Part shown: positions 41,813 to 55,471 of the stretch, piece by piece | Position numbering within the stretch: the stretch's first letter is position 1 | How the letters are laid out: each line of letters starts with the position of its first letter | Virus record (IMG/VR): IMGVR_UViG_3300032331_003609 | Coordinates: 124,001 to 188,000 of that record | Direction: 5' to 3' (one strand) | Length of the DNA: 64,000 nucleotides | The notes under the pieces: generated by a model | The model's database searches: none | What the model saw: only the letters and a program-made list of their open reading frames with translations | What the model was told of the DNA's origin: nothing | Translations under genes and position numbers: made by a program

Positions 41813-41828
41813 AAGAAAAAGTTTACAT

Positions 41829-42941
41829 ATGAAGCTTATTGAAAATTTTAAATCATATAGTGATTGCAAAGAAGCATTAATAGAATCGTATGGTGATATT
41901 GATATTGCAAAAACCAAATTAATTAAAAAGGGATATTCATCGGATGATTTAGACGAAAGTTTAAATGCAATCAAAGAATCATTAGGCGATAAGATTATTA
42001 ACTTTTTTTCTAAAAATCTAGGGGGTGGTATTTCTAAAATAGACAGAATACTAAGAGATATAAAAGAAGAAGAAATTAGATTTATCAGGGACGAGCATGA
42101 AGCAGAATCTAAATTCTATAAATTAAGCACAGCACTAGGACAATTAAAAAGGGATAAAGCAGACAAGTCGGAAATGGATCAATATGTTATTAAATTGAAT
42201 AAGATTCAAAAATTAATAAGAGATTTAGTTTCTTCACACAGCTCTATTATGGATAGCCTAGAAAAACAAATAGATGTTCTAACTAATAAGAAGAATAGAA
42301 GAAGCGAGTACTATAACTTAAAAAGAGCAGAGGATGCTGTAGAGACTAAAAAACTAAGAGCAGAATTTAAAAAGAAGCTTATTAGTCAAGAAGATGATTC
42401 TGAGTACTTAAAAGATATTCAAAAGATTCTTGGAAATCCCAAAGATGCAGAGAAAGATTTAGAAAAAGCTAAGGAGAACCTAGCTAAAGAAAAAGGTGAA
42501 ATAGGAGCAAGCGACGAGGTTTCTAGAATGTCACCAGATAAGATAGAAAATATCTTGAGTGAATATCATAAAGAAATTATGGCTTCGCTCAAAGACGTTA
42601 AAGACTATACAGAAAAATCATTAGACAGGATTCAAGAGCTTTCTGATAATAAGAAAATGAATCAAGGAGCTTATAACAGTATGAAAAATACATTTGAATC
42701 TAAGATAAGTAAGATTTCTAAGTATGTTGAAGAAGCTAAGAGTAAAATATCACAAATAGGAACTTCCGATGAAGAGATAGGAGAAGATTCAAATAAAGCA
42801 ATAACTTATCTTTTGAACCTGGAAAAAGCAGTTACCAATATAAAGTATTATACTTGGCCAGCTGATGATCTTTCTAAAGAGAAAAAAGAGATTCAATCTG
42901 CTTTAGAAGTAGTAGAAGACGAAATACAAAAAGCAGCTTAA
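41829..42941 (+). CDS. Charged coiled-coil putative internal head protein
   Basis: MKLIENFKSY N-terminus; K/E-rich helical composition. Confidence 0.75.
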   Translation: MKLIENFKSYSDCKEALIESYGDIDIAKTKLIKKGYSSDDLDESLNAIKESLGDKIINFFSKNLGGGISKIDRILRDIKEEEIRFIRDEHEAESKFYKLSTALGQLKRDKADKSEMDQYVIKLNKIQKLIRDLVSSHSSIMDSLEKQIDVLTNKKNRRSEYYNLKRAEDAVETKKLRAEFKKKLISQEDDSEYLKDIQKILGNPKDAEKDLEKAKENLAKEKGEIGASDEVSRMSPDKIENILSEYHKEIMASLKDVKDYTEKSLDRIQELSDNKKMNQGAYNSMKNTFESKISKISKYVEEAKSKISQIGTSDEEIGEDSNKAITYLLNLEKAVTNIKYYTWPADDLSKEKKEIQSALEVVEDEIQKAA

Positions 42942-43768
42942 TGAAGAAGTACTCAGACTTCATATTGGACGATTCCCTTAATGAAGGTTTTCTAAAGAAC
43001 CTCTTTGGAAAAATAGGATCTTTCCTCAAGGGCAGTAAAAGATCTATTTTAGATAAGATTTCTAAAATGAAAGATGCCGAAAAGGAATTCATCAATAAAT
43101 CTGATGAATTAAATTATGATATCTTTTCTTCAGAACTAGGAAGAAACCAAGATCCAAATTCAAGACAAAGAGCATTGATGAGCAAAAGAGCACTTGAAGC
43201 TATAAGGCTTGCAAAAAATGGTGAAATAAATTTCATAGTAAAGGAAGTGAAAGAAATATGCGGTTCTGATCCTTCCCTTGCAAATTTTTACAATCAACAA
43301 AAAATGCTAGCAGACACAGAGCTTGCACAATATGCCTATGAGAAAGCCAAAAAATTTAAAGATAATGATTATGAGAGGGATTTTTATAATCAATGGAAAA
43401 CTTTAGACTCCGAGGTTCAAAAGGTTAAATTTGACAGTTTTGAAGATGAAGAAGACACTGTTGCTAATTTAGGAATGTTTGATCTTCCGTTAAAAGAATT
43501 TGTTAGTCAAATACAAGGATTACCTAAATCTGACATAGCTCAATTATTAAGCGATGCAAATGATTTAAAATGGAAAATTGCTGACGATTATAGAAAAAAA
43601 TCAATGAGCATTCGCGAATTAAAAAATAGATCATATAGATCCGGCGATATATCCTCTTTTAATTTTTCAAGAGAGAAGTTTGAAGAAATGAAAAATATAT
43701 ACAGAAAGGCTAATGTCTCTATAGACAATAAAATATCAATGCTAAAAAACAGATTAAAGAATATATAA
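42941..43768 (+). CDS. Charged coiled-coil putative internal head protein, related to 41829..42941
   Basis: MKKYSDFILDDSLNE|G; a FF/FL-...-I..I...E.EFI pattern is shared with the preceding gene. Confidence 0.75.
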   Translation: MKKYSDFILDDSLNEGFLKNLFGKIGSFLKGSKRSILDKISKMKDAEKEFINKSDELNYDIFSSELGRNQDPNSRQRALMSKRALEAIRLAKNGEINFIVKEVKEICGSDPSLANFYNQQKMLADTELAQYAYEKAKKFKDNDYERDFYNQWKTLDSEVQKVKFDSFEDEEDTVANLGMFDLPLKEFVSQIQGLPKSDIAQLLSDANDLKWKIADDYRKKSMSIRELKNRSYRSGDISSFNFSREKFEEMKNIYRKANVSIDNKISMLKNRLKNI

Positions 43769-43779
43769 TATAAAAAAAG

Positions 43780-46143
43780 ATGAAAAATAACATCTATAAC
43801 CCACTTTTTGAAAGCTTGCTTAAAAAAGTAAACGATTACGAAAATCCACAAGGCATCTCAGAACAAGATGGTGCGGTGAAAGGAACTATTTTTAGCGACT
43901 ATATGAAAGCTATGTCTCAATTAGGTTCTAAATTGGTTGCACAATATGCCAATGCTATTCAGACCTATCCTAAGACTGCTGTTAAGACTGAATACATGAA
44001 AACCTTTACTGATAAATTAAAGGCCATTGAAAGCTCTATAGATATTACAAAAACACCATCTATCCAATTGGATGCTTTATTTAACAATGTTAAAACTGAG
44101 GCAACAGCATTTTTTGGATTGGGTGCTAAAGAAGATAAAAATCTTGTTAAATACCTAGAGCCATGGAGAGATGCATTTAGAACAGGATTTCAACTTTATA
44201 CCCAAGCATTTAAAAGCTTAATGGAATATGTTAAAAAACAAGAAGAGAGTGGCCAAGCTAAAATTAGCGAAACTGAAAAGGGTATGATGAAAGCAGGTGT
44301 TAGTAAATTTATTGCATCACTTACTGCATCTTTTGAAAAAAACAAGACAATCACAGATACTAAATGGGGAGAACCCGTTGTTGGTGAGTCTTTAGTTAGA
44401 GATAACTCAGTTATAGAAAAACTAATTCAAAACAAAATATGCGTTGATTTTAACACCTTTAATACAGTAGTTAATGAAGCTAAAGAGGATAGAATTGCAA
44501 GAAGAGCAGCAAAATCAGCAAGGGTTAATATAGAAGTATTACAGGCAAACATTTCAAATGTTCTAAACCAAATAGGAGGGAGACTTGGAGATCCGGCTAA
44601 AGCTAATTTTAAATCTCTAGCAATGGCTCCTGAATTTAACAAGATTGCAAACACTCTAGTTTCTATCCAAGACGAATTGTCAATTGATAGGTCAGAATTA
44701 AAGAATGTTCAATTTGATGATTTAGATAAACAAATTGCCAATCTAACGGATCTATTCAAGACTAAAAAAGATTCTTATGATAAGACATATTCTGAAGAAG
44801 AAAAAACACTAAGAAGTTCTAAAACATTAGAAATTGCAACACCAGAGGTTGCCAAGTTTATTGCAGACGGAGATGCTCAATTCGATGCATTATCAGATCT
44901 GGCTCAAAACGGAGCTAATCTTTTCTCTGCAGATATTGAAAAAGCAAAACAAGATAAATCACAAGCAGATAAAATAAAGGGAGAATCTCAACCAAAGAAT
45001 CCAGGCAAGAAAGACGGAGAGGTACAAAAAGGTCAAGACGGAGCAGATTGGAAATGGGACGCTAAAGCAAAGGTTTGGAATAAAGTAGAAGTTGCTGATC
45101 CTGTTTCTACCTCAAATATTAAAATTGCATCACCGATTAAAAAAGGTGCTAAAGGTGATCAGGTTAAAGCAGTTCAGCAATTGATCATGGATAAAATGGG
45201 TACAAAATTGAAAGATGTACCTCAGTATAAGAAATTTGCTAAATACGGAGCAGATGGTATATTCGGAGGATCCACAGCATCTTTAGTTCCTGCGATGAAA
45301 GGGGCGTTAGGGTTAAAAGACACTTCTTCTGATATTACACAGGAATTGGTTGATAAATTATCAGCAGTTATTAAAGAATCATTTGTTTTCGAACAAGATT
45401 TCGATATGGACGTTTTTAATAAAATCATAGGAAGCGGAGGGGGAGGAGACACCAAACCAGCAAAGGGAAGTTCGGGTGCAGGATCACCTATAAATTCTGC
45501 AGCTTTTAAATGTATTAAAGCTAAGGAAACTACAGAATTTGCAATGAAGGGAGGAAAAGCAGTGGTAACAAGGGCAACTACTGGAAATATTCACGAATTT
45601 AAAGCAGACGGAAGTTATAGAATTTACATAAAAAGTGAGGATAAATGGAAAAGGGGTGTTTGGAGTTGTGCGGGTAATTCTTATCAAGCAACAATAGAAG
45701 GAGGCGAAGTCTATCTTGGTGATTATCAGAATTTTAAAAGTGAAATTGATAAATCGCAAAAAGTAGCAGCAGAAGCAGCAGCTAAAAAAGCAGCAGAACA
45801 GATTGCTAGTGCTAGAGTAATTTGTCAGATTCTCCTTCAAGCAATGGCAGGTGCTAGTGAAGATGAGGGAACAGTTTATAAAACATTCCAGGATAAAATC
45901 ACAACCAAGGAGATGTTTAATACTGTTGAGGCCCAGTGGAATTCGCTTTGGCCAAGTAAAGCTGATATGAACGGCACGATGATATCAGCTAAATCAAAAA
46001 GTTGGGAAGAACTTAAGAAAGCGTGTGCATTTACTGGAACAAAGAATGGATTTAGCTTTAGAAACATATTTACACAGTTTTTTAGTTCTTCTGAAATAGC
46101 TAGATTGAATCAATATTTACCAGCAGGGGTTAAAGCAATTTAA
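43780..46143 (+). CDS. 787-aa putative internal/ejection protein with peptidoglycan-binding-like motif
   Basis: YNPLFES N-terminus; IKKGAKGDQVKAVQQ...YGADGIFG..T motif. Confidence 0.72.
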   Translation: MKNNIYNPLFESLLKKVNDYENPQGISEQDGAVKGTIFSDYMKAMSQLGSKLVAQYANAIQTYPKTAVKTEYMKTFTDKLKAIESSIDITKTPSIQLDALFNNVKTEATAFFGLGAKEDKNLVKYLEPWRDAFRTGFQLYTQAFKSLMEYVKKQEESGQAKISETEKGMMKAGVSKFIASLTASFEKNKTITDTKWGEPVVGESLVRDNSVIEKLIQNKICVDFNTFNTVVNEAKEDRIARRAAKSARVNIEVLQANISNVLNQIGGRLGDPAKANFKSLAMAPEFNKIANTLVSIQDELSIDRSELKNVQFDDLDKQIANLTDLFKTKKDSYDKTYSEEEKTLRSSKTLEIATPEVAKFIADGDAQFDALSDLAQNGANLFSADIEKAKQDKSQADKIKGESQPKNPGKKDGEVQKGQDGADWKWDAKAKVWNKVEVADPVSTSNIKIASPIKKGAKGDQVKAVQQLIMDKMGTKLKDVPQYKKFAKYGADGIFGGSTASLVPAMKGALGLKDTSSDITQELVDKLSAVIKESFVFEQDFDMDVFNKIIGSGGGGDTKPAKGSSGAGSPINSAAFKCIKAKETTEFAMKGGKAVVTRATTGNIHEFKADGSYRIYIKSEDKWKRGVWSCAGNSYQATIEGGEVYLGDYQNFKSEIDKSQKVAAEAAAKKAAEQIASARVICQILLQAMAGASEDEGTVYKTFQDKITTKEMFNTVEAQWNSLWPSKADMNGTMISAKSKSWEELKKACAFTGTKNGFSFRNIFTQFFSSSEIARLNQYLPAGVKAI

Positions 46144-46164
46144 TTTTACATTTTTTATCTAGGG

Positions 46165-46196
46165 GAAACTTTAGTACATTTGGGATATAAAATATA
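46165..46196 (+). promoter_or_regulatory. Overlapping ECF-type (GAAACTT-N16-TAAAATATA) and Bacteroidota -7 (TACATTTG, 46175-46182) promoters
   Basis: Both motifs precede the 46203 ATG. Confidence 0.6.
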
Positions 46197-46202
46197 AATT
46201 TT

Positions 46203-46742
46203 ATGTCCCTTTTTGTTATTGAAGGAGCTAGAAAATCTGGTAAAACACATTTTGTTAGTTCCCAAAGTTGGATCCCCGTATTTAAATTTGATTTCAATGG
46301 ATTGTACACATCCTTGGATCTTCCTGCAGAGGGTGAAAAAACTCACCATATTGGACTGGGTAAGGAGCTAATGGTTCAGCAACTAAACAGGGATGGTTTT
46401 CTTTCAGATCTAATGATGGACCGGGGAATTATTACTAATTCAGTCTGGGGTATTCTAAATAAAAGGGTAAGCAAAAAATCTGTTTATAAAGAGCTAGATT
46501 ATATGCTTGAAAACAATCTTTTTAAAGACACCTTCTTTTTTTTAATCACTGGAACATCCCCAGAGAATAGAGAGAAAGATGTTTGGGATTATATGGACAA
46601 GAAGATTCCTGAAGAAAGTGCTCTTTTTATAGAACTTGGAAATTATCTTTCAGAAAGAGGGGTAAAGATTCAGACAATCGAAAATAAATTTGATGCTGAA
46701 TCACTCTCTGCATTCCAAACTATAATTAAAAACCTTAAATAA
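46203..46742 (+). CDS. P-loop (deoxy)nucleoside monophosphate kinase, thymidylate kinase-like
   Basis: VIEGARKSGKT Walker A; MDRG motif. Confidence 0.75.
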   Translation: MSLFVIEGARKSGKTHFVSSQSWIPVFKFDFNGLYTSLDLPAEGEKTHHIGLGKELMVQQLNRDGFLSDLMMDRGIITNSVWGILNKRVSKKSVYKELDYMLENNLFKDTFFFLITGTSPENREKDVWDYMDKKIPEESALFIELGNYLSERGVKIQTIENKFDAESLSAFQTIIKNLK

Positions 46743-46743
46743 T

Positions 46744-48177
46744 ATGTGTGGAATACTAATTGCTCATAATCCCTCCGAGGAAAGAATTAAGTCAATATCG
46801 CACAGGGGTATCGAATATTCCACACACTCAGATGCATCGGGATTAACCCTATGCCATCACAGATTGCCTATCCAAACAGCAATAGGTGACGGTTGGATTC
46901 AACCGGTCGAGATATCGAAAGACAAGTACCTTCTATTCAATGGCGAAATTTTTAATTATCCCACGGAGCTATATGATTCAGATACTGCGTATCTAGCTAG
47001 TCTTTTTTCTACCTGCCTAGACTTTTCATCACTTGAGATGTTTAGTGCTCTCTACGAGCCCCATATTAAGAGCTGGGATGGTTTCTGGGCTATTTGTCTG
47101 GTTGATATGAAGACAAAGAACGTTATTTGTTTTACAGACCCTCTAGGTAAGAAGTGCCTATACTATAATGATCTTGGAGAAATCTGCTCTGAAATGAAAG
47201 GACTTATTAATAGTGCTTCTTTCTTAGATAGATCCTTTATGGGCGGTGTAAGAAAATGGGGGTATGTTCCTAATGAATCTACCCCATTTGAAAACATCCA
47301 GAAGATCCGACCAAACTACTTTTATCAATGGAATTTTGCTGCTCCAGACTTCAAGAAGCTATATGGTCCCTATTTCTCATTTAAACCCCCCAAATTTGAG
47401 TTTAATTCTGAGGATGAGATGTTAGATTGGGTTTGGAACAAAGTTGAAGCAGCGACAAAGAATAGACTGTTAAGCTTGGACTATCCTATATCCATCCTGC
47501 TTTCAGGAGGTCTGGATTCATCTATCATTGGTGGGCTTCTTCTTAAGCTAGGTGCGGATGTTAGTTGGTATACCATAAACAACGGACCGGACAATGATTA
47601 TGTCAGAGAATGCGAGAATTATTGGGGTATTAAAGTAAACCAATTGGAATATACAATGAACGAAGATAGTATTAATCTGGATGAATTGTATTTTAAGTGG
47701 AATGAATCTCCTATAGATTTAGGCAGCGTGGTACCACAGTACCTGCTATTTGATGCGATTAAAAAAGGAACAGACACTAGAATAGTCCTATCAGGGGACG
47801 GAGCAGATGAAATGTTTGGAGGATATAGAAGGATAGATGAGTACGACTCACAAGGATCTGATGTTTTCCATGAATTAACATATTACCATTTACCAAGACT
47901 TGATAAAATGAGCATGGCACACACATTAGAGCTTAGAAATCCTTTTCTGAATTTAGAGCTTCTTCAAATGGCACTAAATCTTCCGATGGATTTAAGGAAA
48001 CATAAGACCATTCTTAAGAAAGCATTCAAAGGATTGGTTCCAGATTCTGTTATAGAAAGAAAAAAGCATCCATTAAAGAATGAAAGAATAGTGAAAGATC
48101 CTATGGAATATAGAATAGAAGCTATTGAAAGCTTTAAAAAGGGATACAGCGATTTTTTAGAAAGAGGAGAATATTAA
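46744..48177 (+). CDS. asnB: Asparagine synthase-like glutamine-dependent amidotransferase (AsnB family)
   Basis: N-terminal MCGI, HRG, H.RL.I, FNGEIFNY, LLSGGLDSS, LSGDGADEMFGGY, LELRNPFL. Confidence 0.93.
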   Translation: MCGILIAHNPSEERIKSISHRGIEYSTHSDASGLTLCHHRLPIQTAIGDGWIQPVEISKDKYLLFNGEIFNYPTELYDSDTAYLASLFSTCLDFSSLEMFSALYEPHIKSWDGFWAICLVDMKTKNVICFTDPLGKKCLYYNDLGEICSEMKGLINSASFLDRSFMGGVRKWGYVPNESTPFENIQKIRPNYFYQWNFAAPDFKKLYGPYFSFKPPKFEFNSEDEMLDWVWNKVEAATKNRLLSLDYPISILLSGGLDSSIIGGLLLKLGADVSWYTINNGPDNDYVRECENYWGIKVNQLEYTMNEDSINLDELYFKWNESPIDLGSVVPQYLLFDAIKKGTDTRIVLSGDGADEMFGGYRRIDEYDSQGSDVFHELTYYHLPRLDKMSMAHTLELRNPFLNLELLQMALNLPMDLRKHKTILKKAFKGLVPDSVIERKKHPLKNERIVKDPMEYRIEAIESFKKGYSDFLERGEY

Positions 48178-49661
48178 TAAAGCTCAATTCCTGCTAGAGA
48201 ATCACCTTTTGCATTAAGTGGTGAATAATCTTCTGGTTCATCCGTCAAAAGAAACGTCTTACTTGCATCGACAACTAAACCAGCTATTCCCATAAATCCC
48301 CTGTTAATTAGTATCGGAGTACTTTTGTTAGTTCTATCAACAATAGAAAATTTAACCTTCTTGTAAACCATTTCCCCGAATTCAATATCTAAAAGAATAA
48401 CTGGCCTTTTATCAGTTTGATCCCCAACTTCTGCATGGGAATATTCCATTATTCTGTTACTAAAGGATTTACCCCCAACTGTCCAATTTAAAAATCCATC
48501 AACCTCTTCTGAAAAATCTGCATGAAGAGAACACGCAATAGATCCGTTGCCAGTATCTAATTTACCTATAAATTTGCCAACCCCCTTGATATCAAAGCTC
48601 TCTCTAAATCCCACCATTTTTCGAGGATAATTCCAGTTCTTTTTATCAAGTATAAAATCTAAGATAATTCCTGTTACGTCAAGACCCGTTGCTTTTTCTA
48701 TGCCGTCAGTTCCTGGTGATGCGTTTACTTCTAAAACATATGGTATACCAGTATTTTTTCCAATAATAATATCAACACCACACCACGAGCATTCAGTTGC
48801 TTTAGCAGCTCCTATTGCTATTTTTTCTATCTCTTTAGATATTTCTACTGCCTCTGCTACCCCACCTAAAGACACGTTTGTTCTAAAGTCATTCTCTATT
48901 CTGTGTCTTTTCATAGAGGCTATAATTGTATAATCATCCCCGTCGCCTGTAGAATTTCTAGATCCAACTACGTGTATTCTTAAATCAAAGTCAGCTTCTA
49001 TTTTTTCTTGGACTATTAATTCAGTTTCTGGCGAAAGCTTCCATATTGTTTGTAAAGTTGAGAAAAGAGACGTTTTAGAATCTATCTGAAATACACCTAT
49101 TCCTTTGGTGCCGCTTAATGTTTTTACTACAATAGGGTATTTTCCCCCGATTTTACTCATAGCATTTTCTATATCATCCTCTGATGATATTAAAGCAGTT
49201 TTTGGTGTCGGTATTCCTTTTTCTTGGAGTTTTTGAACAGTGTCTAACTTATCTTCACAAAGAAGTACAGATCTTGGTGAATTCACTGATACAAATCCAA
49301 GAGATTCAAGTTTTTCAAAAAATTTAACAGCTGCTGTTGAGTTTATTGATGATCTTCTAGCAAGTATTGCTGTATTTTTAATATCAATCTCATACTTGTT
49401 GTTGCTTCCTTTATTTCTAATAAAGAAGCTTCCTGTTTCACTTTTTTCGATTTCCCCCTGCGATGTGTTAATTATGATGCATTTAAATCCTAAAGAAGTG
49501 GATTTCTCCATCATTTTTTTAACAGTTGGAGCAAGATAGTTTTTTCTTGATTCTAATTTGGTTGTAAGAATCACAAGGGAAATAGGCTTTTTTGAGCCTA
49601 TCTTTAGATTCTCAGCTCCCTGAAAAACAAAATCATCTTCTTTGGTCAATAAATTATCCAT
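48174..49661 (-). CDS. rimK: RimK-family ATP-grasp ligase fused to C-terminal retropepsin-like (RimB/ATP-dependent Zn-protease family) domain
   Basis: DKL.T...L...GIP.PKT, P.VVK...G..GIGV, DLR..V.G, FR.NVS.GG, GVDII, LEVN.SPG; then KLDTGNG...SLHA...RPVI.LD..F...FSIVDR...ILINR.FM. Confidence 0.9.
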   Translation of the reverse strand: MDNLLTKEDDFVFQGAENLKIGSKKPISLVILTTKLESRKNYLAPTVKKMMEKSTSLGFKCIIINTSQGEIEKSETGSFFIRNKGSNNKYEIDIKNTAILARRSSINSTAAVKFFEKLESLGFVSVNSPRSVLLCEDKLDTVQKLQEKGIPTPKTALISSEDDIENAMSKIGGKYPIVVKTLSGTKGIGVFQIDSKTSLFSTLQTIWKLSPETELIVQEKIEADFDLRIHVVGSRNSTGDGDDYTIIASMKRHRIENDFRTNVSLGGVAEAVEISKEIEKIAIGAAKATECSWCGVDIIIGKNTGIPYVLEVNASPGTDGIEKATGLDVTGIILDFILDKKNWNYPRKMVGFRESFDIKGVGKFIGKLDTGNGSIACSLHADFSEEVDGFLNWTVGGKSFSNRIMEYSHAEVGDQTDKRPVILLDIEFGEMVYKKVKFSIVDRTNKSTPILINRGFMGIAGLVVDASKTFLLTDEPEDYSPLNAKGDSLAGIELY

Positions 49662-49678
49662 CTAAAACTTAATTGATC

Positions 49679-49686
49679 TATATATC
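49679..49686 (-). promoter_or_regulatory. Late promoter GATATATA for the RimK fusion
   Basis: TATATATC on +, 17 nt before the minus-strand ATG. Confidence 0.65.
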
Positions 49687-49696
49687 CTTGGCAAAT

Positions 49697-49726
49697 AAAA
49701 AAGGAGATCTTTGAGGATCTCCTTTT
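49697..49726 (-). terminator. Intrinsic terminator between the Glu-rich gene and rimK
   Basis: AAAAGGAGATC-6 nt-GATCTCCTTTT perfect inverted repeat with T-run on the minus strand. Confidence 0.8.
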
Positions 49727-49749
49727 GTTTATTTTGTTTTAATTTATTG

Positions 49750-50331
49750 TTAATTGAAAAATCTATTAAAAGCAGGGTTTAAAATTTCTTCAGATTCTTC
49801 TTCTTCATGATCCATTTCCTCGCCTTCTTCCATTTCTTCGTGGGTCATTTCTTCTCCTTCCTCCATTTCTTCATCTTCTTCCATTTCTTCCTCATTGACA
49901 TCCGCTTCATCTTCTAGTTCTTCCTCCTCATTATACTCATCTAGGTCAATTTCTTCCTCTTCACCATCCTCTTCATCCTCATCTTCTTCGTTCATATTTT
50001 CTTCCATATCTTCCTCTTCTTCCATACTTTCTTCTTCTTCCTCTTCTTCCATACTTTCTTCTTCTTCCTCTTCTTCTTCCTCGTTATCTGTCATATCATC
50101 AGAAGTGGTATCATCGTCCATATCAAATGAGGAATCTACTCCATCAGTTTCTTCATCTTCTTCTTCTGTTTCATCGTCAGTAGGAATTGAATCTGCACCA
50201 CCATCGGTTTCAGTTTCTTCTTGATCTGCTGTATCTGCAGTGTCCATATCCATTTCTGTATTGTCTTGACCAAGTGTTCCTTCAGTGTATTGTTTAGAAA
50301 ACTCCTCAAAACTTAATATCTTTTTTTCCAT
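49750..50331 (-). CDS. Extremely acidic poly-Glu/Asp protein, putative internal head or core protein
   Basis: 193 aa with runs such as EEEEEEEESMEEEEEEESMEEEE; MEKKILSFEEF N-terminus; GATATATA 18 nt upstream. Confidence 0.8.
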   Translation of the reverse strand: MEKKILSFEEFSKQYTEGTLGQDNTEMDMDTADTADQEETETDGGADSIPTDDETEEEDEETDGVDSSFDMDDDTTSDDMTDNEEEEEEEEESMEEEEEEESMEEEEDMEENMNEEDEDEEDGEEEEIDLDEYNEEEELEDEADVNEEEMEEDEEMEEGEEMTHEEMEEGEEMDHEEEESEEILNPAFNRFFN

Positions 50332-50349
50332 TTTTGAATTATTTATATC

Positions 50350-50357
50350 TATATATC
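50350..50357 (-). promoter_or_regulatory. Late promoter GATATATA
   Basis: 18 nt upstream of the 50331 ATG. Confidence 0.65.
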
Positions 50358-50376
50358 TTTTTGCGTGATCGCATTC

Positions 50377-50610
50377 TTATTCTGCACCCCCTGATTCTAC
50401 TGCTCCGTTGCCTGGATAATCTATCTTAGATTGATTTTTAAAAATAGCGTCCCCATAACCAACATACTCGTAAGGTTTTTCTAATTTAATTTCATGAAAA
50501 GGGGATCTATCCTCTTTACTCATGTTCTTAGGATTCCATGGGTCTGCTATAACTTTTAAGAAGTCTTTAAACTCTAAGATCTCCCTCTTTTTTACGTTTT
50601 TCTGATGCAT
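50377..50610 (-). CDS. Small putative internal head protein
   Basis: 77 aa; ILEFKDFLK motif similar to neighbours. Confidence 0.6.
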   Translation of the reverse strand: MHQKNVKKREILEFKDFLKVIADPWNPKNMSKEDRSPFHEIKLEKPYEYVGYGDAIFKNQSKIDYPGNGAVESGGAE

Positions 50611-50624
50611 CTTTTCTTTTTTTA

Positions 50625-51323
50625 TTATCCTAGTCCTAAAAGACTTAATATTCCAGTATTAGTACTACCTGTTCCGTCGGTCGATTTGGCTGATGTTTTA
50701 GCTGCAGTAGCTAAATCTTTTTCTGAGAATTTTCCGCCTCCAAATATACTTTTGAATGATGTTCCTTCCCCACAAACTATTCCCTCTAATTTAGTTTCTA
50801 GCATAGTTGCAAAAGCGGTAGAGTTTATATAGGTAGTTAATGCCTCTCTTGTTGAAGCTACAAAAGTACCTCCTAAACCAGATTCAAAATTAATGTTTAT
50901 TCCTAATCCTCTAGAAAGTATAAGTGAGATAGCTTTTTCTTCTATTGTTTCTGTTAATCCTAATGTTATTGCTTTTGTCCAATATTTACAAGATCCTGCC
51001 CCGAAATAACTACCAATGTGCATAAATGAGATATTTTCCACTATATTCTTTGCAAATTCACTCATAAACCCACCGTCGTTTGGTAATCCGAATTTGTCCA
51101 AAAGCCATCCAGCAGCATAGTTTTTTAGTCTATCTTCAAATCCACCCATTAATTTACCGCCTAGACCGCTAATTAAATCCCAAAGGCCTTCATTTATTTG
51201 ATCTACTGATTCACCTTTGTGCAGCATATCATTATAATGAGCTTCTAAACCTTCCACTATTCTGAAATATTCTTCGTCTGTTACATTAACCTTTGTAAAT
51301 TCTGAATATTTGATGACTTTCAT
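50625..51323 (-). CDS. Putative internal head / membrane-active protein (true start MKVIKYSEF at 51323)
   Basis: GATATATA 17 nt upstream of this ATG; amphipathic Gly-rich helices (GLWDLISGLGGKLMGG; GILSLLGLG). Confidence 0.75.
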   Translation of the reverse strand: MKVIKYSEFTKVNVTDEEYFRIVEGLEAHYNDMLHKGESVDQINEGLWDLISGLGGKLMGGFEDRLKNYAAGWLLDKFGLPNDGGFMSEFAKNIVENISFMHIGSYFGAGSCKYWTKAITLGLTETIEEKAISLILSRGLGININFESGLGGTFVASTREALTTYINSTAFATMLETKLEGIVCGEGTSFKSIFGGGKFSEKDLATAAKTSAKSTDGTGSTNTGILSLLGLG

Positions 51324-51340
51324 TTCTACTTTATTTTTAT

Positions 51341-51379
51341 TATATATCTCTTCTATAATAATAAAACCAAAGATATATA
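51341..51379. promoter_or_regulatory. Divergent pair of GATATATA late promoters (51341-51348 minus, 51372-51379 plus)
   Basis: Back-to-back exact motifs between divergent genes. Confidence 0.7.
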
Positions 51380-51400
51380 ACCATATAATCAAGTCACCCA

Positions 51401-51973
51401 TTGAAACACCTTCTAAGTTATAGAGATTTATTTGAAAGTACCTCTGCTGGATCCCAGGATAGGGGATCTTCAGATGTGCCTCCGTTCAAGTTTGCTATAA
51501 ACTTCGACCCTAGACTAGGATACACTAAAAACGATTTTGTGCAGGATTTGACTGAGATCTATTTGGGATATCCATTAAAGGACCGTAGAGATCTTATGGA
51601 TGCTGTTTTTAAAAGCGCTGGTGTTTTTAAAATATCAGACATTCAGGATCTTCCGCAGGACAGGGTAGATAAATTAATCAAAAGCGTAGAAGAGTATATG
51701 GAAAGTAAATCCGAGTATAAATTAGAAATACTTCCAGACGGGTTTATTCTTTGCTTTGAGGGGCTTAAACACCGAAAAAGAACTTGTGATGTTTATTACT
51801 CCCCGACGGAAAGAAAAGTAAAAATATCATATACCGACGCCTATCCAGAAAATGAAGAGATAATAATTGGGATAGATGGATTTTCTCCTATATCAGTAGG
51901 AGTTGATAATAACGATTTTATGGCGACGGTTGAAAAGTGCGATGATTATGCTAAAAAGTCTAATCCCTTATAG
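51401..51973 (+). CDS. Hypothetical protein with capsid-targeting-like N-terminus (TTG start)
   Basis: MKHLLSYRDLFE|S; late promoter 21 nt upstream. Confidence 0.7.
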   Translation: MKHLLSYRDLFESTSAGSQDRGSSDVPPFKFAINFDPRLGYTKNDFVQDLTEIYLGYPLKDRRDLMDAVFKSAGVFKISDIQDLPQDRVDKLIKSVEEYMESKSEYKLEILPDGFILCFEGLKHRKRTCDVYYSPTERKVKISYTDAYPENEEIIIGIDGFSPISVGVDNNDFMATVEKCDDYAKKSNPL

Positions 51974-53489: not shown

Positions 53490-54620
53490 ATGTTATCAGG
53501 AAAAATAAGTAAGATACGAAAAATTTGGAATCCTATTAAGGATTTTATTAAACCCGAATTGGATATAAATGATACCCCGAAGAATCCGGGTGTTACCGGC
53601 AATACATCAAACGTTACTGTTAAACATAAGATCATCAGCTATTATGCTGATTATGAAGAAAGAAAATATTATAAGGGATTTGCCAAAGCACTTATAGAGA
53701 GGTGCAAAGGATTTGGCTTGGACTATGATATTGCAGAAATTGAATCCAGAGGAAACTATGGAGATAATTGTCTAATGAAGCCTGAGTTTATCCTTGAAAA
53801 ATTAAAGCAGTATAAAAAACCTCTAATATGGATGGATTGCGACACCGACTTTAGAGAGCCGTTTGATCATTTCAATGAGGTTACAGAGGATATAGGAATG
53901 GCAACTCATAGCGGGAATATTGAGGGAATCAAAGCATCCCCCTTATATTTAAATTACACTAAAGGTGCTTTTAGAATAATAAGAGAGTGGGTGATTCATT
54001 GTAGAGAATGTTATGATAATGGTATAGTCGAATTAGATCATGACGCATTAAAGCACTACGTACTAGATACAATTAAAGGATCATATTCGATATACATACT
54101 AAATAAAAATTGGAACGACTTTGTACATGGGCGTTATATTTGGAATGGGAACTCAAAAGTCGAAGGCAAGGTACAGACCCATAGACAGGTAGGTGTTACA
54201 GATGATGTAAGAAGATCCTACTCACAAAATGCTAAGACATTTAAAATTATATTCAAATCGGAGACACCAGAGGATTTTAAATCTGGGTTGATCTTCTTAG
54301 ATCAATTTTCAGATAGATCCAGAATTAATTTTATTTTTAAAAAGAAGCTTTTAGCCGAATCTATAGATAATGATGATTTTGCTAGACTTAAAATAGAATC
54401 TGGCGGATTGATATACTTTGATCCCTCCGTTCTTGATTCTATTGAACCAGGAAAATCCGATATTATTATAGAAGCTACAAACGTCACAAGCATAGAGCAA
54501 GATTGGGATCTTAAAATTATATCGAGTATAGACACGGAACAAAATCCACTTGATGATTTATTTTTTGATTCAAAAGAAGGGGGAGTTAGAATAAAAACAT
54601 ATAAAAAACTATGGAGCTAA
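53490..54620 (+). CDS. GT-A glycosyltransferase (paralog of 52843..53430) with degenerate C-terminal domain
   Basis: NCLMKPEFIL..L, WMDCD, ASPLY, DHDAL. Confidence 0.75.
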   Translation: MLSGKISKIRKIWNPIKDFIKPELDINDTPKNPGVTGNTSNVTVKHKIISYYADYEERKYYKGFAKALIERCKGFGLDYDIAEIESRGNYGDNCLMKPEFILEKLKQYKKPLIWMDCDTDFREPFDHFNEVTEDIGMATHSGNIEGIKASPLYLNYTKGAFRIIREWVIHCRECYDNGIVELDHDALKHYVLDTIKGSYSIYILNKNWNDFVHGRYIWNGNSKVEGKVQTHRQVGVTDDVRRSYSQNAKTFKIIFKSETPEDFKSGLIFLDQFSDRSRINFIFKKKLLAESIDNDDFARLKIESGGLIYFDPSVLDSIEPGKSDIIIEATNVTSIEQDWDLKIISSIDTEQNPLDDLFFDSKEGGVRIKTYKKLWS

Positions 54621-55471
54621 TAAAAGGCATAGGAATGCCATTTCCTGAGAATTATTCTTCATGCTCTAATCTGCCGCCAAAAGAATTTTGCTGGACTAGT
54701 AAGGAGGGTATAGCAGATATCTATATTGATGATAAAATAATGGACGGGTTACAAACTCCTAAGAGTAATTCTAAATTTGGATGGCTTTGTGAATCTAGAG
54801 AGATCGCTATAGATATTTTTAATACTATATTACAAAATCCTAAAAAATTCAAAGAAAAATATGCAGGTATTTTTACGTGTGATGAGACTTTATTAGGGTG
54901 TGATTCTTTATTCATATATGCACCACCAGGATCTAATCTTCCGTGGACCAAGCCTGAAGAAATATCAATTTATGAAAAAAGTAAACTATGCTCTATGTTA
55001 TGCTCGCCTAAGGCAAGAACAGAAGGGCATAAACTCAGACTAGAAGTAGCAAAGACCCTAATGAATAGATTGGATTTATTCGGAGGTGCCCATGGATCCC
55101 CTAGAATAGGTGAGGGATTTGGACCAAAGCAGGATTGGTGGAGATCTAAATTACCAGCTTTAAAAGATTACATGTTTTCAATTGTTTTCGAAAATGCTGT
55201 TTATGACAAGTATTACACTGAAAAAATAACAGACTGTTTTGCAACAGGGACAATTCCAGTTTATTGGGGAACTAAAAAAGTGGTAGAGGATTTTAATTCT
55301 GATGGAATTATATTTTATGATGAACTGGGTTCAATAGAAGATCTAAATGAAGAATTATATCTTTCTAAATCAGATTCAATCAAAGATAATTTAGAAAGAG
55401 TCAGATCATTAAAGTCTGGAGATGATTGTGTTTATTCTGCTATAAAAACAATTCAAAATGCAGAAAAATAA
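54611..55471 (+). CDS. GT10-like (fucosyltransferase-type) glycosyltransferase
   Basis: K...LKDYMFSIVFEN....YYTEKITDCF.TGTIPVYWG. Confidence 0.82.
   Translation: MELIKGIGMPFPENYSSCSNLPPKEFCWTSKEGIADIYIDDKIMDGLQTPKSNSKFGWLCESREIAIDIFNTILQNPKKFKEKYAGIFTCDETLLGCDSLFIYAPPGSNLPWTKPEEISIYEKSKLCSMLCSPKARTEGHKLRLEVAKTLMNRLDLFGGAHGSPRIGEGFGPKQDWWRSKLPALKDYMFSIVFENAVYDKYYTEKITDCFATGTIPVYWGTKKVVEDFNSDGIIFYDELGSIEDLNEELYLSKSDSIKDNLERVRSLKSGDDCVYSAIKTIQNAEK

What the first reader, a model, noticed from the sequence alone, without database searches (positions are those of the whole stretch)
48174..50331. Possible phage poly-glutamate write/erase system: RimK-RimB fusion beside an encoded poly-Glu protein
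One ORF joins an intact RimK ATP-grasp ligase to a C-terminal retropepsin-like domain (LDTG near 48550). In Pseudomonas the rimK-linked retropepsin RimB cleaves poly-alpha-glutamate, and the fusions I know place the protease first; here the order is reversed. Immediately upstream and co-oriented is a 193-aa protein with long Glu runs and a capsid-targeting-like leader. Both genes have GATATATA late promoters. Hypothesis: a late glutamylation and deglutamylation module that processes an acidic head protein, or remodels host ribosomal S6, during assembly or after injection.
Basis: partly seen in the sequence, partly recalled or inferred. Interest (0 to 1): 0.8.

Follow-up and report, generated by a model that had tools for sequence, protein, structure and literature searches.

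The report
Phage poly-glutamate enzyme with polyacidic partner
A freshwater T4-like phage makes, late in infection, a two-domain enzyme predicted to add and cut glutamate chains, beside an extremely acidic disordered protein with a head-targeting-like leader; the pairing recurs in related phages and points to an untested protein-modification step linked to the phage head.

Summary
ORF 48174-49661 (-) encodes an intact RimK-family alpha-L-glutamate ligase. It is fused at its C-terminus to a PF05618 (RimB/RloA-type) retropepsin-like domain with an invariant DTG.

ORF 49750-50331 (-) encodes a 193-aa polyanion: 104 Asp+Glu, net charge -100, Glu runs of 9 and 7. Its leader resembles the T4 capsid-targeting sequence. 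Each gene has its own GATATATA motif, the motif that precedes this phage's structural genes.

The ligase-then-peptidase order is not new. It was reported in marine phage contigs and in Halobacteria in 2008.

What appears new is the partnership:
- 35 of 36 hyper-acidic ORFs in the flanks of 86 related loci lie within 1.5 kb of the enzyme gene.
- They occur in two gene orders, in two enzyme clades.
- They share the promoter-like motif and a short terminal peptide (h-x-F-x-D/E-F).
- In other clades the enzyme carries that peptide at its own N-terminus, followed by a T4-protease-like h-x-E|A site.

Other clades, including Pelagibacter phage Mosig, have no such partner, so it is not obligatory.

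Best reading (about 0.4): a late, head-associated module in which the enzyme trims and extends the acidic protein with glutamate. No activity, substrate or packaging was shown here.

The parts
48174..49661 (-). Gene for the 495-aa bifunctional enzyme: RimK-type ligase followed by a retropepsin-like peptidase
   Evidence: Uninterrupted ORF. Family and structure evidence. More than 235 homologues in the protein collection and at least 581 hits in IMG/VR.
49584..49661 (-). N-terminal leader, residues 1-26. Disordered in the model; carries the clade-specific F-[IV]-F-[QK]-G motif
   Evidence: pLDDT is below 50 for residues 1-5 and 11-23, and the first strand of the fold is at residues 28-33. N-termini across the family are compared.
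48630..49583 (-). RimK-family ATP-grasp alpha-L-glutamate ligase domain, residues 27-344
   Evidence: PF08443 at 4e-38; TIGR00768 at 169.6 bits, above its 143.4 cutoff. PDB RimK matches 7qyr, 7qys and 5zct at 2e-31 to 3e-30. Foldseek target-normalised TM 0.88. Invariant K138, K180, G184-V190 loop, D226, R228, E311 and N313.
48246..48629 (-). PF05618 (RimB/RloA-type) retropepsin-like aspartic peptidase domain, residues 345-472. Catalytic D369-T370-G371 at nt 48549-48557
   Evidence: Profile matches 2pma, 9g59 and 9g58 at 5e-12 to 5e-11. AF2 pLDDT 91; foldseek finds 2pma, RloA2 and RloA, then HIV proteases. DTGN conserved.
48177..48245 (-). Conserved C-terminal tail, residues 473-495, with the motif Y-S-P-x-x-A-K-G-D-x-x-A-G-I. 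Function unknown
   Evidence: Conserved in the 52-row supergroup but absent from the Mosig and YerA41 proteins. Modelled with high confidence, mean pLDDT about 88-94 per 10-residue block.
49679..49686 (-). GATATATA promoter-like motif, 18 nt upstream of the enzyme's start codon
   Evidence: A similar motif lies upstream of 42 of 86 enzyme genes, against 125 of 1202 other genes.
49699..49726 (-). Intrinsic-terminator-like hairpin with a T-run, after the acidic gene
   Evidence: 11-pair stem followed by a T-rich tail. A metatranscriptome contig ends at 49730.
49750..50331 (-). Gene for the 193-aa hyper-acidic, presumably disordered partner. N-terminal leader KKILSFEEF...YTE|G; C-terminal peptide ILNPAFNRFFN
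   Evidence: Conserved upstream and co-oriented in 14 of the 16 clade-A loci, and about 1 kb upstream on the opposite strand in the other 2.
50350..50357 (-). GATATATA promoter-like motif, 19 nt upstream of the acidic gene's start codon
   Evidence: Present upstream of 27 of 35 partner genes.
50377..50610 (-). 77-aa protein with the same type of leader (REILEFKDFLKVIAD). Conserved in all clade-A loci
   Evidence: cluster 13. No family match.
50625..51323 (-). 232-aa Gly-rich protein with leader MKVIKYSEFTKV. The start is most likely at 51323, with a GATATATA motif at 51341-51348
   Evidence: Conserved in clade A (cluster 12).
51401..51973 (+). 190-aa protein with leader MKHLLSYRDLFE|S. Divergently transcribed, with a GATATATA motif at 51372-51379
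   Evidence: Conserved in clade A (cluster 11).
46203..48177 (+). Convergent neighbours conserved in clade A only: a P-loop kinase-like protein (46203-46742) and an AsnB-like glutamine amidotransferase (46744-48177). The amidotransferase's stop overlaps the enzyme's stop by 4 nt. Any relation to the module is unknown
   Evidence: PF00733 at 3.7e-39 and TIGR01536 at 2e-64, below its cutoff. Atlas lead to dNK/thymidylate-kinase-like phage proteins. Clusters 14 and 15 occur in 16 and 15 loci.

Best explanation
This is a late-expressed module of a freshwater T4-like phage, probably associated with the head.

THE ENZYME. One polypeptide joins a RimK-type ATP-dependent ligase to a RimB/RloA-type retropepsin-like aspartic peptidase. 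The ligase would add L-glutamate to a C-terminal glutamate. The peptidase would cut within or trim glutamate-rich tails.

THE PARTNER. It is a 193-aa disordered polyanion with net charge -100. Its ends carry a short peptide, h-x-F-x-(D/E)-F. At the N-terminus this peptide is followed by Y-T-E|G, which resembles the T4 capsid-targeting sequence and its gp21 cleavage site.

PROPOSED MECHANISM.
1. The polyacid is made late and loaded into the prohead core through its terminal peptides. In most clades the enzyme, through its own N-terminal copy of the peptide, is loaded too.
2. A cut after a Glu, by the Glu-specific prohead protease or by the retropepsin domain, exposes a Glu C-terminus.
3. The ligase domain extends that end with alpha-linked glutamates and the peptidase domain trims it back. 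Together they set the length and amount of a polyanionic peptide pool.
4. This pool would be analogous to the acidic internal peptides that T4 derives from gp67. It would stay in the head or be ejected with the DNA.

SHOWN HERE: domain identities and conserved catalytic motifs; gene linkage in two arrangements; the shared promoter-like motif; the shared terminal peptide; T4-type head genes in the same block.

INFERRED: packaging, proteolytic priming, that the partner is the substrate, and the purpose of the polyanion.
For: 1. BOTH DOMAINS LOOK ACTIVE AND ARE KEPT TOGETHER. They are conserved as a unit in at least 581 viral contigs. Full-length copies in cellular collections occur only on MAG contigs, mostly short and taxonomically scattered. 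Isolate genomes match the RimK part only.

2. BIOCHEMICAL PRECEDENT. RimB cuts terminal and internal Glu runs, including an E8 linker. It binds RimK and switches it to poly-alpha-glutamate synthesis of up to 28 residues (PMC11957791).

3. LINKAGE.
- All 16 clade-A loci have the polyacid next to the enzyme gene: co-oriented and immediately upstream in 14, about 1 kb upstream on the opposite strand in 2.
- 17 of 23 clade-B rows have a convergent polyacid downstream.
- 35 of 36 acidic ORFs in the flanks lie within 1.5 kb of the enzyme gene (p = 5e-15).
- Searching from the leader, 15 of 17 informative acidic genes have the enzyme adjacent.

4. CO-REGULATION. A GATATATA-like motif lies upstream of 42 of 86 enzyme genes and 27 of 35 partner genes, against 10% of other genes. 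This holds even where the pair sits among replication genes. In the window the motif precedes structural genes.

5. SHARED PEPTIDE.
- Clade-A partner N-terminus: KKILSFEEFS.
- Clade-B partner C-terminus: RVLSF.DFFNKN.
- Enzyme N-terminus in the clades under 50% identity: l.F.sFlnEak.
- T4 IPIII: MKTYQEFIAE|A.
- The strict pattern occurs in 37 of 171 enzyme N-termini, 27 of 1016 other N-termini and 0.08% of internal windows.
- In T4, residues 4 and 7 of the sequence direct targeting and residues 8 and 10 direct processing (PMC9026906).

6. HEAD CONTEXT. The phage has gp20, gp21-like and gp23 homologues. N-terminal h-x-E|[AGS] sites cluster in the block 34557-51973, which includes the major capsid protein and the acidic protein.

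7. VIRION DATA. The YerA41 homologue was detected in virions by LC-MS/MS (PMC7354516).

8. T4 ANALOGY. T4 gp67 ends in a polyacidic tail.

9. TRANSCRIPTS. Metatranscriptome contigs of a relative cover the acidic gene and its two upstream neighbours. They stop at the terminator before the enzyme gene.
Against: - The window-clade enzyme lacks the canonical leader and cleavage site; it has F-V-F-Q-G instead. Its own packaging is therefore the weakest link.
- Several enzyme clades have no adjacent polyacid, and the complete Mosig genome has none. The family's core function cannot require it.
- Partners are not uniformly Glu-rich, whereas RimB did not cut an all-Asp tail.
- The partner does not end in Glu. 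A prior cut is needed, and no canonical L/I-x-E site precedes its C-terminal peptide.
- The YerA41 proteome listed 63 'particle-associated' proteins, including the ribonucleotide reductase alpha subunit and DNA polymerases. This is weak evidence for packaging. The gene was a middle gene there.
- In many phages the gene lies in the replication module.
- The RNA coverage comes from one small run of a 90-95% identical relative. DNA carry-over cannot be excluded.
Confidence: 0.4

Rival explanations
1. Host-takeover enzyme acting on the ribosome. The enzyme is either packaged and ejected like T4 Alt, or simply cytoplasmic. It glutamylates and deglutamylates host ribosomal protein S6 (RpsF) to retune translation. 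The acidic neighbour is an independent cargo, for example a DNA mimic or polycation sink, that merely shares regulation and targeting.
For: - The closest characterised relatives by sequence and structure are S6-modifying RimK enzymes.
- Sources annotate homologues as S6 glutamate ligases.
- The enzyme occurs without any polyacid in Mosig-like and YerA41-like phages, so it needs a universal target.
- Monier et al. proposed translation control (PMC2530865).
- A leader plus late expression fits an enzyme delivered for the next infection.
- Mosig also encodes an S21 homologue, so it does touch the ribosome.
Against: - The score against the S6 ligase equivalog model is far below its cutoff: 124 bits against 331.
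- The bacterial RimBK hybrid showed no S6 glutamylation in vitro (PMC11957791).
- This reading does not explain why 35 of 36 polyacid genes sit beside the enzyme gene in two different arrangements.
- Cyanophage RimK genes of the metabolic-gene type lack both the leader and the peptidase domain. They look like a different solution.
Confidence: 0.25
2. Free poly-alpha-glutamate factory. The fused RimB-like domain mainly activates the ligase, as RimB does for RimK. The enzyme then makes soluble poly-Glu late in infection, possibly primed on fragments of the acidic protein. The polymer would buffer charge, bind polyamines, Mg or basic proteins, or aid DNA packaging or lysis timing. Nothing would be packaged.
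For: - Poly-Glu was detected in vitro only when RimB was present with RimK (PMC11957791).
- The fusion fixes a 1:1 ratio of the two domains.
- Late-promoter-like motif.
- The window-clade enzyme has no canonical targeting or cleavage site.
Against: - Most clades carry a T4-CTS-like N-terminal leader on the enzyme, which a purely cytoplasmic enzyme would not need.
- The invariant DTG argues that peptidase catalysis, not only binding, is under selection.
- A genome-encoded polyanion of charge -100 already supplies the polymer.
Confidence: 0.15
3. Small-molecule or nucleic-acid modification pathway. Together with the convergent AsnB-like amidotransferase and the P-loop kinase-like protein, the ligase adds glutamate to a cofactor, nucleotide or modified DNA base. 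This would resemble the RimK relatives MptN and CofF, or the ATP-grasp, amidotransferase and peptidase trio of NAGGN synthesis.
For: - The AsnB-like and P-loop genes are conserved beside the enzyme in all clade-A loci.
- The enzyme also matches the MptN and CofF models, and weakly the NAGGN synthetase model. The neighbour matches the NAGGN amidotransferase model below its cutoff.
- The YerA41 homologue lies next to nrdAB and dUTPase, in a phage with hypermodified thymidine.
Against: - Those neighbours are absent outside clade A.
- All the MptN, CofF and NAGGN scores are far below their cutoffs, whereas rimK_fam passes.
- The YerA41 modification was interpreted as an oligosaccharide (PMC9023294).
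- A peptide-cutting retropepsin domain and a linked polyacid protein have no role in such a pathway.
Confidence: 0.08
4. No functional link. The acidic ORF is a fast-evolving low-complexity gene, or an antisense artefact, that happens to lie next to a phage RimK gene.
For: - Low-complexity sequence evolves and expands easily. Indel polymorphism is seen in the Glu-run region.
- An antisense poly-Ser ORF exists at 49895-50224.
Against: - The gene has its own promoter-like motif and a terminator.
- It has conserved non-repetitive termini across divergent loci, and two independent gene orders.
- Adjacency statistics.
- RNA contigs cover it.
Confidence: 0.03

Closest known systems
RimK/RimB (RimABK) system of Pseudomonas (PMC11957791, PMC7343187, PMC10092738)
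   Same: - The same two catalytic families: a RimK alpha-L-glutamate ligase and a PF05618 retropepsin-like peptidase with a catalytic DTG.
- RimB cuts Glu runs and stimulates poly-Glu synthesis by RimK.
- The same add-and-remove logic for glutamate tails.
   Different: - Here both activities are on one chain.
- There is no RimA or c-di-GMP control.
- The system is phage-encoded, carries a late-promoter-like motif, and is linked to a genome-encoded polyanion rather than to rpsF.
- The score against the S6-ligase equivalog model is far below its cutoff.
Bacterial RimBK hybrid (Desulfotalea psychrophila DP2392; Flavobacteriales, Rhodobacterales)
   Same: A single polypeptide with both domains. 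The hybrid's protease domain is active on poly-Glu tails. No S6 glutamylation was seen for the hybrid, which hints at another substrate.
   Different: The domain order is reversed: there RimB is N-terminal, here it is C-terminal. The phage family is separate, with an N-terminal leader and, in part of the family, a conserved C-terminal tail.
Putative phage RimK with C-terminal DUF785 in GOS marine contigs (Monier, Claverie and Ogata 2008, PMC2530865); Halobacteria RimK-DUF785
   Same: The same architecture, ATP-grasp followed by DUF785/PF05618, in T4-like phage contigs next to regA and PolB. This is the context seen here for Mosig and clade B. The window's enzyme belongs to this already noticed family.
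   Different: That report predates the recognition of DUF785 as a poly-Glu peptidase. It does not mention an acidic partner, a leader peptide or late promoters. The window's clade sits in the head-gene block of a 245-kb freshwater phage.
T4 internal proteins IPI-III and Alt with their capsid-targeting sequence; gp21 prohead protease
   Same: - A short N-terminal leader with aromatic residues three apart, followed by h-x-E|A/S/G.
- Several small unrelated genes share the leader.
- The phage has gp20, gp21-like and gp23 head genes.
- Alt is an enzyme packaged and ejected to modify host proteins, and it has propeptides at both ends. The partner here likewise carries the peptide at both ends.
   Different: - T4 internal proteins are basic, whereas this cargo is extremely acidic.
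- In clade B the peptide lies at the C-terminus of the partner.
- Packaging is inferred from sequence only.
T4 gp67 (pip), precursor of acidic internal peptides
   Same: A head-core protein with a polyacidic tail rich in Asp and Glu that yields acidic peptides kept in the head. This is a precedent for a polyanion inside a T4-type head.
   Different: There is no sequence homology. gp67 is 80 aa and has no linked ligase or peptidase. Its peptides are purely genome-encoded.
Eukaryotic tubulin polyglutamylation (TTLL ligases and CCP deglutamylases); from general knowledge, not tested here
   Same: An ATP-grasp-type glutamate ligase opposed by a dedicated deglutamylase, acting on an acidic disordered tail.
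   Different: The enzyme families for removal are unrelated. There the glutamates form gamma-linked branch points on side chains. The biology is different.

Membership tests
RimK family alpha-L-glutamate ligases (TIGR00768 / PF08443) | Sequence reaches the curated family threshold | tested here: met
   TIGR00768 at 169.6 bits against a cutoff of 143.4. PF08443 at 131.4 bits against 21.
RimK family alpha-L-glutamate ligases (TIGR00768 / PF08443) | ATP-grasp fold closest to solved RimK structures | tested here: met
   phmmer against PDB: RimK 7qyr, 7qys, 5zct and 4iwx at 2e-31 to 3e-30, against LysX at 1e-13. Foldseek on the pLDDT-87 model gives RimK first, target-normalised TM 0.88.
RimK family alpha-L-glutamate ligases (TIGR00768 / PF08443) | Conserved nucleotide- and Mg-binding residues of ATP-grasp enzymes: two Lys, a Gly-rich loop and an E-x-N motif | tested here: met
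   K138, K180, G184-G187-G189-V190, D226, R228, E311 and N313 are invariant in 67 homologues. The roles of these residues are assigned from general knowledge of ATP-grasp enzymes, not from a residue-level comparison with RimK.
Ribosomal protein S6--L-glutamate ligase (equivalog NF007764, E. coli RimK orthologues) | Score at equivalog level; S6 as the acceptor | tested here: not met
   124 bits against a cutoff of 331. Acceptor specificity cannot be tested with these tools.
PF05618 / RimB-RloA retropepsin-like aspartic peptidases | Sequence membership | tested here: met
   The single sequence is below the Pfam threshold: 21.6 bits against 27. Many homologues carry precomputed PF05618 hits. The 23-sequence profile matches the solved PF05618 proteins 2pma, 9g59 and 9g58 at 5e-12 to 5e-11 over positions 3-128.
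PF05618 / RimB-RloA retropepsin-like aspartic peptidases | Catalytic Asp in a D-T/S-G motif | tested here: met
   D369 and G371 are invariant and T370 is at least 90% conserved. RimB D31 in the same motif is essential for its activity (PMC11957791).
PF05618 / RimB-RloA retropepsin-like aspartic peptidases | Retropepsin fold | tested here: met
   The AF2 domain model has pLDDT 91. Foldseek top hits are 2pma, RloA2 and RloA at 1e-8 to 1e-6, followed by HIV-1 and HIV-2 proteases.
PF05618 / RimB-RloA retropepsin-like aspartic peptidases | Homodimer forms the active site; specificity for Glu runs | not testable with these tools
   This needs biochemistry or a multimer model. RimK tetramers could bring two C-terminal domains together, but that is inference.
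Bacterial RimBK hybrid (DP2392 type) | RimB domain N-terminal to the RimK domain | tested here: not met
   Here the RimK domain covers residues 27-344 and the peptidase domain residues 345-472. The published hybrid has RimB at residues 1-163.
T4-type capsid-targeted, gp21-processed head proteins | N-terminal leader with aromatic residues at about positions 4 and 7, then hydrophobic-x-Glu followed by a small residue | tested here: met
   ACIDIC PROTEIN: met, with F8, F11 and Y-T-E17|G. ENZYME IN OTHER CLADES: met, for example FKSFITE|AK and FWSFLNE|AK. The strict pattern gives 37 of 171 enzyme N-termini against 0.08% of internal windows. WINDOW'S OWN ENZYME: not met, as it has F-V-F-Q-G-A-E.
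T4-type capsid-targeted, gp21-processed head proteins | The phage encodes a gp21-type prohead protease and a gp23-type capsid protein | tested here: met
   PF03420 at 7.6e-9 (above its cutoff), PF07068 at 7e-39 and PF07230 at 5e-66; PHROG matches.
T4-type capsid-targeted, gp21-processed head proteins | Physical presence in heads and removal of the leader | not testable with these tools
   The only indirect evidence is that the YerA41 homologue was detected by virion LC-MS/MS, among 63 proteins (PMC7354516).

The most novel reading that the evidence does not exclude
T4-like aquatic phages load their heads with a polyglutamylation machine and its polyanionic substrate. A non-templated poly-Glu polymer would then be written and trimmed on a genome-encoded acidic protein, either inside the prohead or immediately after ejection. 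This would be the first enzymatic write/erase protein modification tied to virion assembly or cargo in a phage. The h-x-F-x-(D/E)-F peptide would be a portable head-targeting signal, usable at either end of a protein, and conserved far beyond the T-even phages.
Probability: 0.3. Interest if true: 0.8.

Novelty: new variant of a known kind. Interest (0 to 1): 0.6.

Why it matters
RimK/RimB is so far a bacterial system for tuning ribosomes, and the peptidase half was characterised biochemically only in 2025. A large phage-specific family has at least 581 viral contigs here and more than a hundred marine contigs in 2008. It fuses both activities and, in two clades, keeps them beside an encoded polyanion of charge about -100, under a promoter-like motif shared with this phage's structural genes.

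If the proposed link holds, three things follow:
- It would give the first natural substrate other than S6 for this enzyme pair.
- It would suggest that phage heads can carry enzymatically built polyanions.
- It would extend the T4 capsid-targeting principle to distant freshwater and marine phages. That signal is already used to load foreign proteins into T4 heads.

The hypothesis is directly testable with an isolate such as YerA41 or Mosig, or with recombinant proteins. If instead the target is host S6, the family is a widespread and unstudied phage strategy for translation takeover.

Tried and rejected
- MEGABLAST. The 6-kb region found nothing in the phage collection, so the phage has no close cultured relative.
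- FAMILY SCANS. Pfam, PHROGs and NCBIfam found nothing for the acidic protein or for the 77-, 232-, 190- and 242-aa neighbours.
- PARTNER AS QUERY. Searching with the acidic protein found only near-identical contigs, because the patterns came from the repeats. A degenerate DNA pattern for the leader was used instead.
- POLY-GLU ON DNA. I considered that the YerA41 homologue might build the roughly 1-kDa thymidine hypermodification as a poly-Glu chain. The authors interpret it as an oligosaccharide and do not mention the ATP-grasp gene. The idea survives only inside the low-probability pathway rival.
- OTHER NEIGHBOURS. YerA41_065 and Mosig_00004, next to the homologues, are not acidic.
- MOSIG GENOME. 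A scan of the whole genome found no hyper-acidic ORF.
- ANTISENSE ARTEFACT. I checked whether the clade-B acidic ORFs are antisense artefacts. They have their own GATATATA-type motif, and their C-terminal peptide is conserved through amino-acid substitutions. The artefact reading was rejected.
- MAIN SCAFFOLD. The acidic protein is unlikely to be the main scaffold. The 470-aa extension of the protease gene, which has many h-x-E|S sites, is the better scaffold candidate.
- UNAVAILABLE PAPER. The 2009 amidoligase survey by Iyer and colleagues could not be read.
- LITERATURE. The jumbo-phage survey does not mention this family. No paper in the library combines glutamylation, bacteriophage and RimK beyond the Pseudomonas work.
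- NOT USED. The single exhaustive representative-protein search was not run. The word-indexed search and the contig scans already gave a deep family.

Full report
WHAT IS THERE

The window matches at 100% identity part of a 245-kb IMG/VR contig. It comes from a freshwater phage whose DNA is found in metagenomes from more than ten studies.

The window carries a T4-type structural module:
- two tandem gp20 portal paralogues;
- a gp21-like prohead protease with a long extension;
- a gp23 major capsid protein;
- collagen-like tail fibres.

Almost all genes are on the + strand. A short island of mostly minus-strand genes follows the head genes, at about 48.2-52.7 kb. The finding lies in this island.

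THE ENZYME

ORF 48174-49661 (-) is an uninterrupted 495-codon frame.

Ligase domain, residues about 27-344:
- It is a RimK-family ATP-grasp ligase. PF08443 scores 4e-38, and TIGR00768 scores above its curated cutoff.
- The nearest solved proteins are Pseudomonas and E. coli RimK.
- A confident AF2 model (pLDDT 87) superposes on RimK at target-normalised TM 0.88.
- The residues expected for ATP and Mg binding are invariant across 67 homologues.
- It scores far below the equivalog threshold for the S6 ligase, 124 bits against 331. It is a RimK-family member, not a demonstrable orthologue of E. coli RimK.

Peptidase domain, residues about 345-472:
- It is a PF05618 domain. The single-sequence signal is weak.
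- A profile of 23 homologues matches the three solved PF05618 proteins, including the Pseudomonas RloA aspartic peptidases, at about 1e-11 over the whole domain.
- The domain model (pLDDT 91) finds those structures first and HIV proteases next.
- The D-T-G motif at residues 369-371 is conserved throughout.

The first 23 residues are disordered in the model. A 23-residue C-terminal tail is conserved in part of the family and is modelled confidently. Its role is unknown.

WHAT WAS ALREADY KNOWN

RimB of Pseudomonas is a retropepsin-like endopeptidase. It removes Glu tails from S6, cuts an internal E8 linker, did not cut an all-Asp tail, acts as a dimer, and switches RimK into poly-alpha-glutamate synthesis. 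A bacterial RimBK hybrid has the peptidase at the N-terminus (PMC11957791).

The reversed order is nonetheless not new. Monier, Claverie and Ogata (2008) found more than a hundred marine contigs with phage RimK. Several carried DUF785 (PF05618) on the C-terminal side and lay next to regA and PolB. They also noted the same order in Halobacteria (PMC2530865).

My searches recover that family:
- Full-length relatives occur in Pelagibacter phage Mosig, between regA and the polymerase gene. They also occur in Yersinia phages YerA41 and GN1.
- The word-indexed protein search gives more than 235 proteins.
- IMG/VR gives at least 581 hits.
- Among species-representative genomes, full-length matches occur only on MAG contigs, mostly short and taxonomically scattered. 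Isolate genomes match the ligase part only.

Cyanophage RimK genes of the metabolic-gene type lack both the leader and the peptidase domain. The Melnitz phage protein keeps the leader but ends exactly at the domain boundary.

THE ACIDIC NEIGHBOUR

ORF 49750-50331 (-) encodes 193 residues with 75 Glu, 29 Asp and only 4 Lys+Arg. Net charge is -100. It has Glu runs of 9, 7 and four runs of 4.

It is a real gene:
- It has a GATATATA motif 19 nt upstream of the start codon, and a terminator-like hairpin after the stop.
- Its non-repetitive ends are conserved in relatives.
- Contigs from a lake metatranscriptome, from a 90-95% identical relative, cover it and the two genes upstream of it. They end at the hairpin and do not cover the enzyme gene. 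This rests on one small run, and DNA carry-over cannot be excluded.

The repeat region varies in length between samples.

IS THE PAIRING MORE THAN CHANCE?

I collected 86 loci encoding full-length relatives, with up to 6 kb of flank on each side.

Clade A. All 16 loci whose enzyme is at least 54% identical to the window's form one well-supported clade.
- Every locus has a polyacid of 155-249 aa with 43-76% Asp+Glu.
- It lies immediately upstream and co-oriented in 14 loci, and about 1 kb upstream on the opposite strand in 2.

Clade B. A second clade, 39-45% identical, sits among replication genes (DNA polymerase, topoisomerase and probable clamp genes).
- It has a convergent downstream polyacid of 93-201 aa in 19 loci, which is 17 of 23 non-identical enzyme rows.
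- Each has its own GATATATA-type motif in a 30-nt intergenic gap.

Overall statistics:
- Of 36 ORFs with at least 28% Asp+Glu among 1270 flank genes, 35 lie within 1.5 kb of the enzyme gene (Fisher p = 5e-15).
- Searching from the other side, with a degenerate DNA pattern for the leader, 15 of 17 informative acidic genes have the enzyme adjacent and 2 do not.

The remaining clades show no adjacent polyacid. These include the Mosig-like and YerA41-like clades and several groups known only from metagenomes. The complete Mosig genome has none at all. The link is therefore strong but clade-limited.

A SHARED TERMINAL PEPTIDE AND A SHARED PROMOTER-LIKE MOTIF

The partners are conserved only in being polyanionic and in their ends. 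The consensus sequences are:
- clade-A partner N-terminus: KKILSFEEFS;
- clade-A partner C-terminus: i.npaFn.FFN, which is VIRFDNFFN in one subclade;
- clade-B partner C-terminus: RVLSF.DFFNKN;
- enzyme N-terminus in all clades under 50% identity: l.F.sFlnEak.

Examples of enzyme N-termini are FKSFITE|AK and FWSFLNE|AK. The T4 internal proteins, read from the T4 record, start MKTYQEFIAE|A. In T4, residues 4 and 7 of this capsid-targeting sequence direct packaging. Residues 8 and 10 direct cleavage by gp21 after Glu (PMC9026906).

A strict version of the pattern occurs in 37 of 171 non-redundant enzyme N-termini and in 27 of 1016 other N-termini. It occurs in 0.08% of internal windows. In Mosig the enzyme is the only protein in the genome that has it.

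In the window, the leader type recurs on the three neighbouring small genes at 50377-50610, 50625-51323 and 51401-51973. N-terminal h-x-E|[AGS] sites at residues 11-19 are concentrated in the block 34557-51973. This block includes the capsid protein, four large proteins around it, the acidic protein and the 190-aa protein.

In clade B, the next gene after the polyacid also starts MKKILEF.DF.

A GATATATA-like motif lies within 45 nt upstream of 42 of 86 enzyme genes and 27 of 35 partner genes. It lies upstream of 10% of the other genes. In the window it is enriched, 18 occurrences against 5.4 expected, and it precedes the portal, protease and other structural genes.

One weakness needs stating. 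The window's own clade has F-[IV]-F-[QK]-G at the enzyme's N-terminus and no canonical Glu site. Its own packaging is therefore less well supported than that of its partner.

HOW IT MOST LIKELY WORKS

The two catalytic domains are kept together and intact, so both adding and cutting matter.

The partner is a polyanion that RimK-type enzymes should bind, since their known acceptor is the acidic tail of S6. In the window it also has Glu runs of the kind RimB cuts.

The partner does not end in Glu, so it needs a cut first. That cut could come from the Glu-specific prohead protease or from the retropepsin domain. Either would leave a Glu C-terminus, which is the acceptor a RimK ligase needs.

I therefore favour, at about 0.4, a late, head-associated module. 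In it the polyacid, and in most clades the enzyme, enters the prohead through the terminal peptide. The enzyme then sets the length of Glu tails on the resulting fragments. T4 gives a precedent for acidic peptides inside heads, because gp67 ends in a polyacidic tail.

The YerA41 homologue, listed as a 'ribosomal protein modification protein', was detected in virions. However, 62 other proteins were also listed, and the gene was a middle gene there (PMC7354516).

Every step beyond domain identity, linkage and motif sharing is inference.

RIVALS

- Host S6 (0.25). The enzyme may act on host S6, delivered like T4 Alt or acting in the cytoplasm. This best explains the clades without a partner, but not the linkage.
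- Free poly-Glu (0.15). The enzyme may mainly make free poly-Glu.
- Pathway (0.08). It may belong to a pathway with the convergent AsnB-like amidotransferase and the P-loop kinase-like protein. Those neighbours are confined to clade A, and the peptidase and the polyacid would have no role.
- Chance (0.03). Chance adjacency is disfavoured.

VERDICT

The enzyme belongs to a phage family noticed in 2008 and never characterised. The following appear to be new in the literature I could search:
- the linkage to encoded polyanions;
- the shared targeting-like peptide;
- the late-type promoter-like motif.

I rate it a new variant of a known kind, with interest 0.6.

Noticed in passing
window 21351-22943 and 22947-24680 (+): Two tandem T4-type portal (gp20) genes, 51% identical over their full length. 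Both match PF07230 / phrog_213. Two portal paralogues in one phage are unusual.
   Followed up: partly
window 37872-39953 (+), internal motif at 38477-38484: The gp21-like prohead protease domain covers residues about 17-218 and is followed by a roughly 470-aa extension with many h-x-E|S sites. An internal GATATATA motif lies within the gene. This may be a fused or separately expressed scaffold/core protein.
   Followed up: partly
window 46203-46742 and 46744-48177 (+): A P-loop dNK/thymidylate-kinase-like protein and an AsnB-like glutamine amidotransferase starting MCG (N-terminal Cys2). They are conserved in all clade-A loci and converge on the enzyme gene with 4-nt overlapping stop codons. 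The combination recalls the ATP-grasp, amidotransferase and peptidase trio of NAGGN synthesis. One speculation, untested, is that the amidotransferase amidates acidic chains.
   Followed up: partly
window 34557-35303 (+): A 248-aa protein with a weak poly(A)-polymerase/nucleotidyltransferase-like Pfam hit (2.7e-4, below the cutoff). Its leader resembles the capsid-targeting type (NFKQWILNE|G). It is a possible packaged nucleotidyltransferase.
   Followed up: no
window 35315-37840, 41829-42941, 42941-43768, 43780-46143 (+): Four proteins around the capsid gene with no family match. Each has an N-terminal h-x-E|S/G site at residues 11-19, for example MKKYSDFILDDSLNE|G. They are candidate processed head or ejection proteins.
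   Followed up: partly
window 49950-50000: The Glu-run region of the acidic gene shows length polymorphism between samples: a 12-nt deletion at 49955 and a 27-nt insertion after 49998. Assemblies break there. The two 100%-identity loci differ by 4 residues (193 against 189 aa).
   Followed up: partly
window 48177-48245 (enzyme residues 473-495): A conserved C-terminal tail, Y-S-P-x-x-A-K-G-D-x-x-A-G-I, beyond the retropepsin fold. It is confidently modelled. It is present in the supergroup that contains both partner-bearing clades and absent from the Mosig and YerA41 proteins.
   Followed up: no
L027 7402-7584 and 7907-8224; likewise in 22 clade-B loci: In clade B, the enzyme gene is followed by a conserved 60-aa ORF that may be ribbon-helix-helix-like (judged by eye, not tested). 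After the convergent polyacid comes a 105-aa gene starting MKKILEF.DF, the same leader type.
   Followed up: no
L201 82-1131 (Methylophilales phage Melnitz-3): The RimK-like protein keeps the capsid-targeting-like leader (FSQFITE|E) but ends exactly at the ligase/peptidase boundary. The peptidase domain has been lost or split off in this close relative of Mosig.
   Followed up: no
L183 and L189 (IMG/VR contigs 3300021962_000198 and 3300017913_001781): Two acidic proteins (37% and 46% Asp+Glu) start with the same KKILSFEEF leader but have no enzyme gene in the available flank. These are exceptions to the pairing.
   Followed up: no
window 53490-62530 (+): A run of co-oriented genes. Several N-termini look like Rossmann-type sugar-nucleotide enzymes, for example starts with G-x-x-G-x-x-G. 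This may be a glycan or sugar-modification cluster. It was judged from N-terminal sequences only.
   Followed up: no
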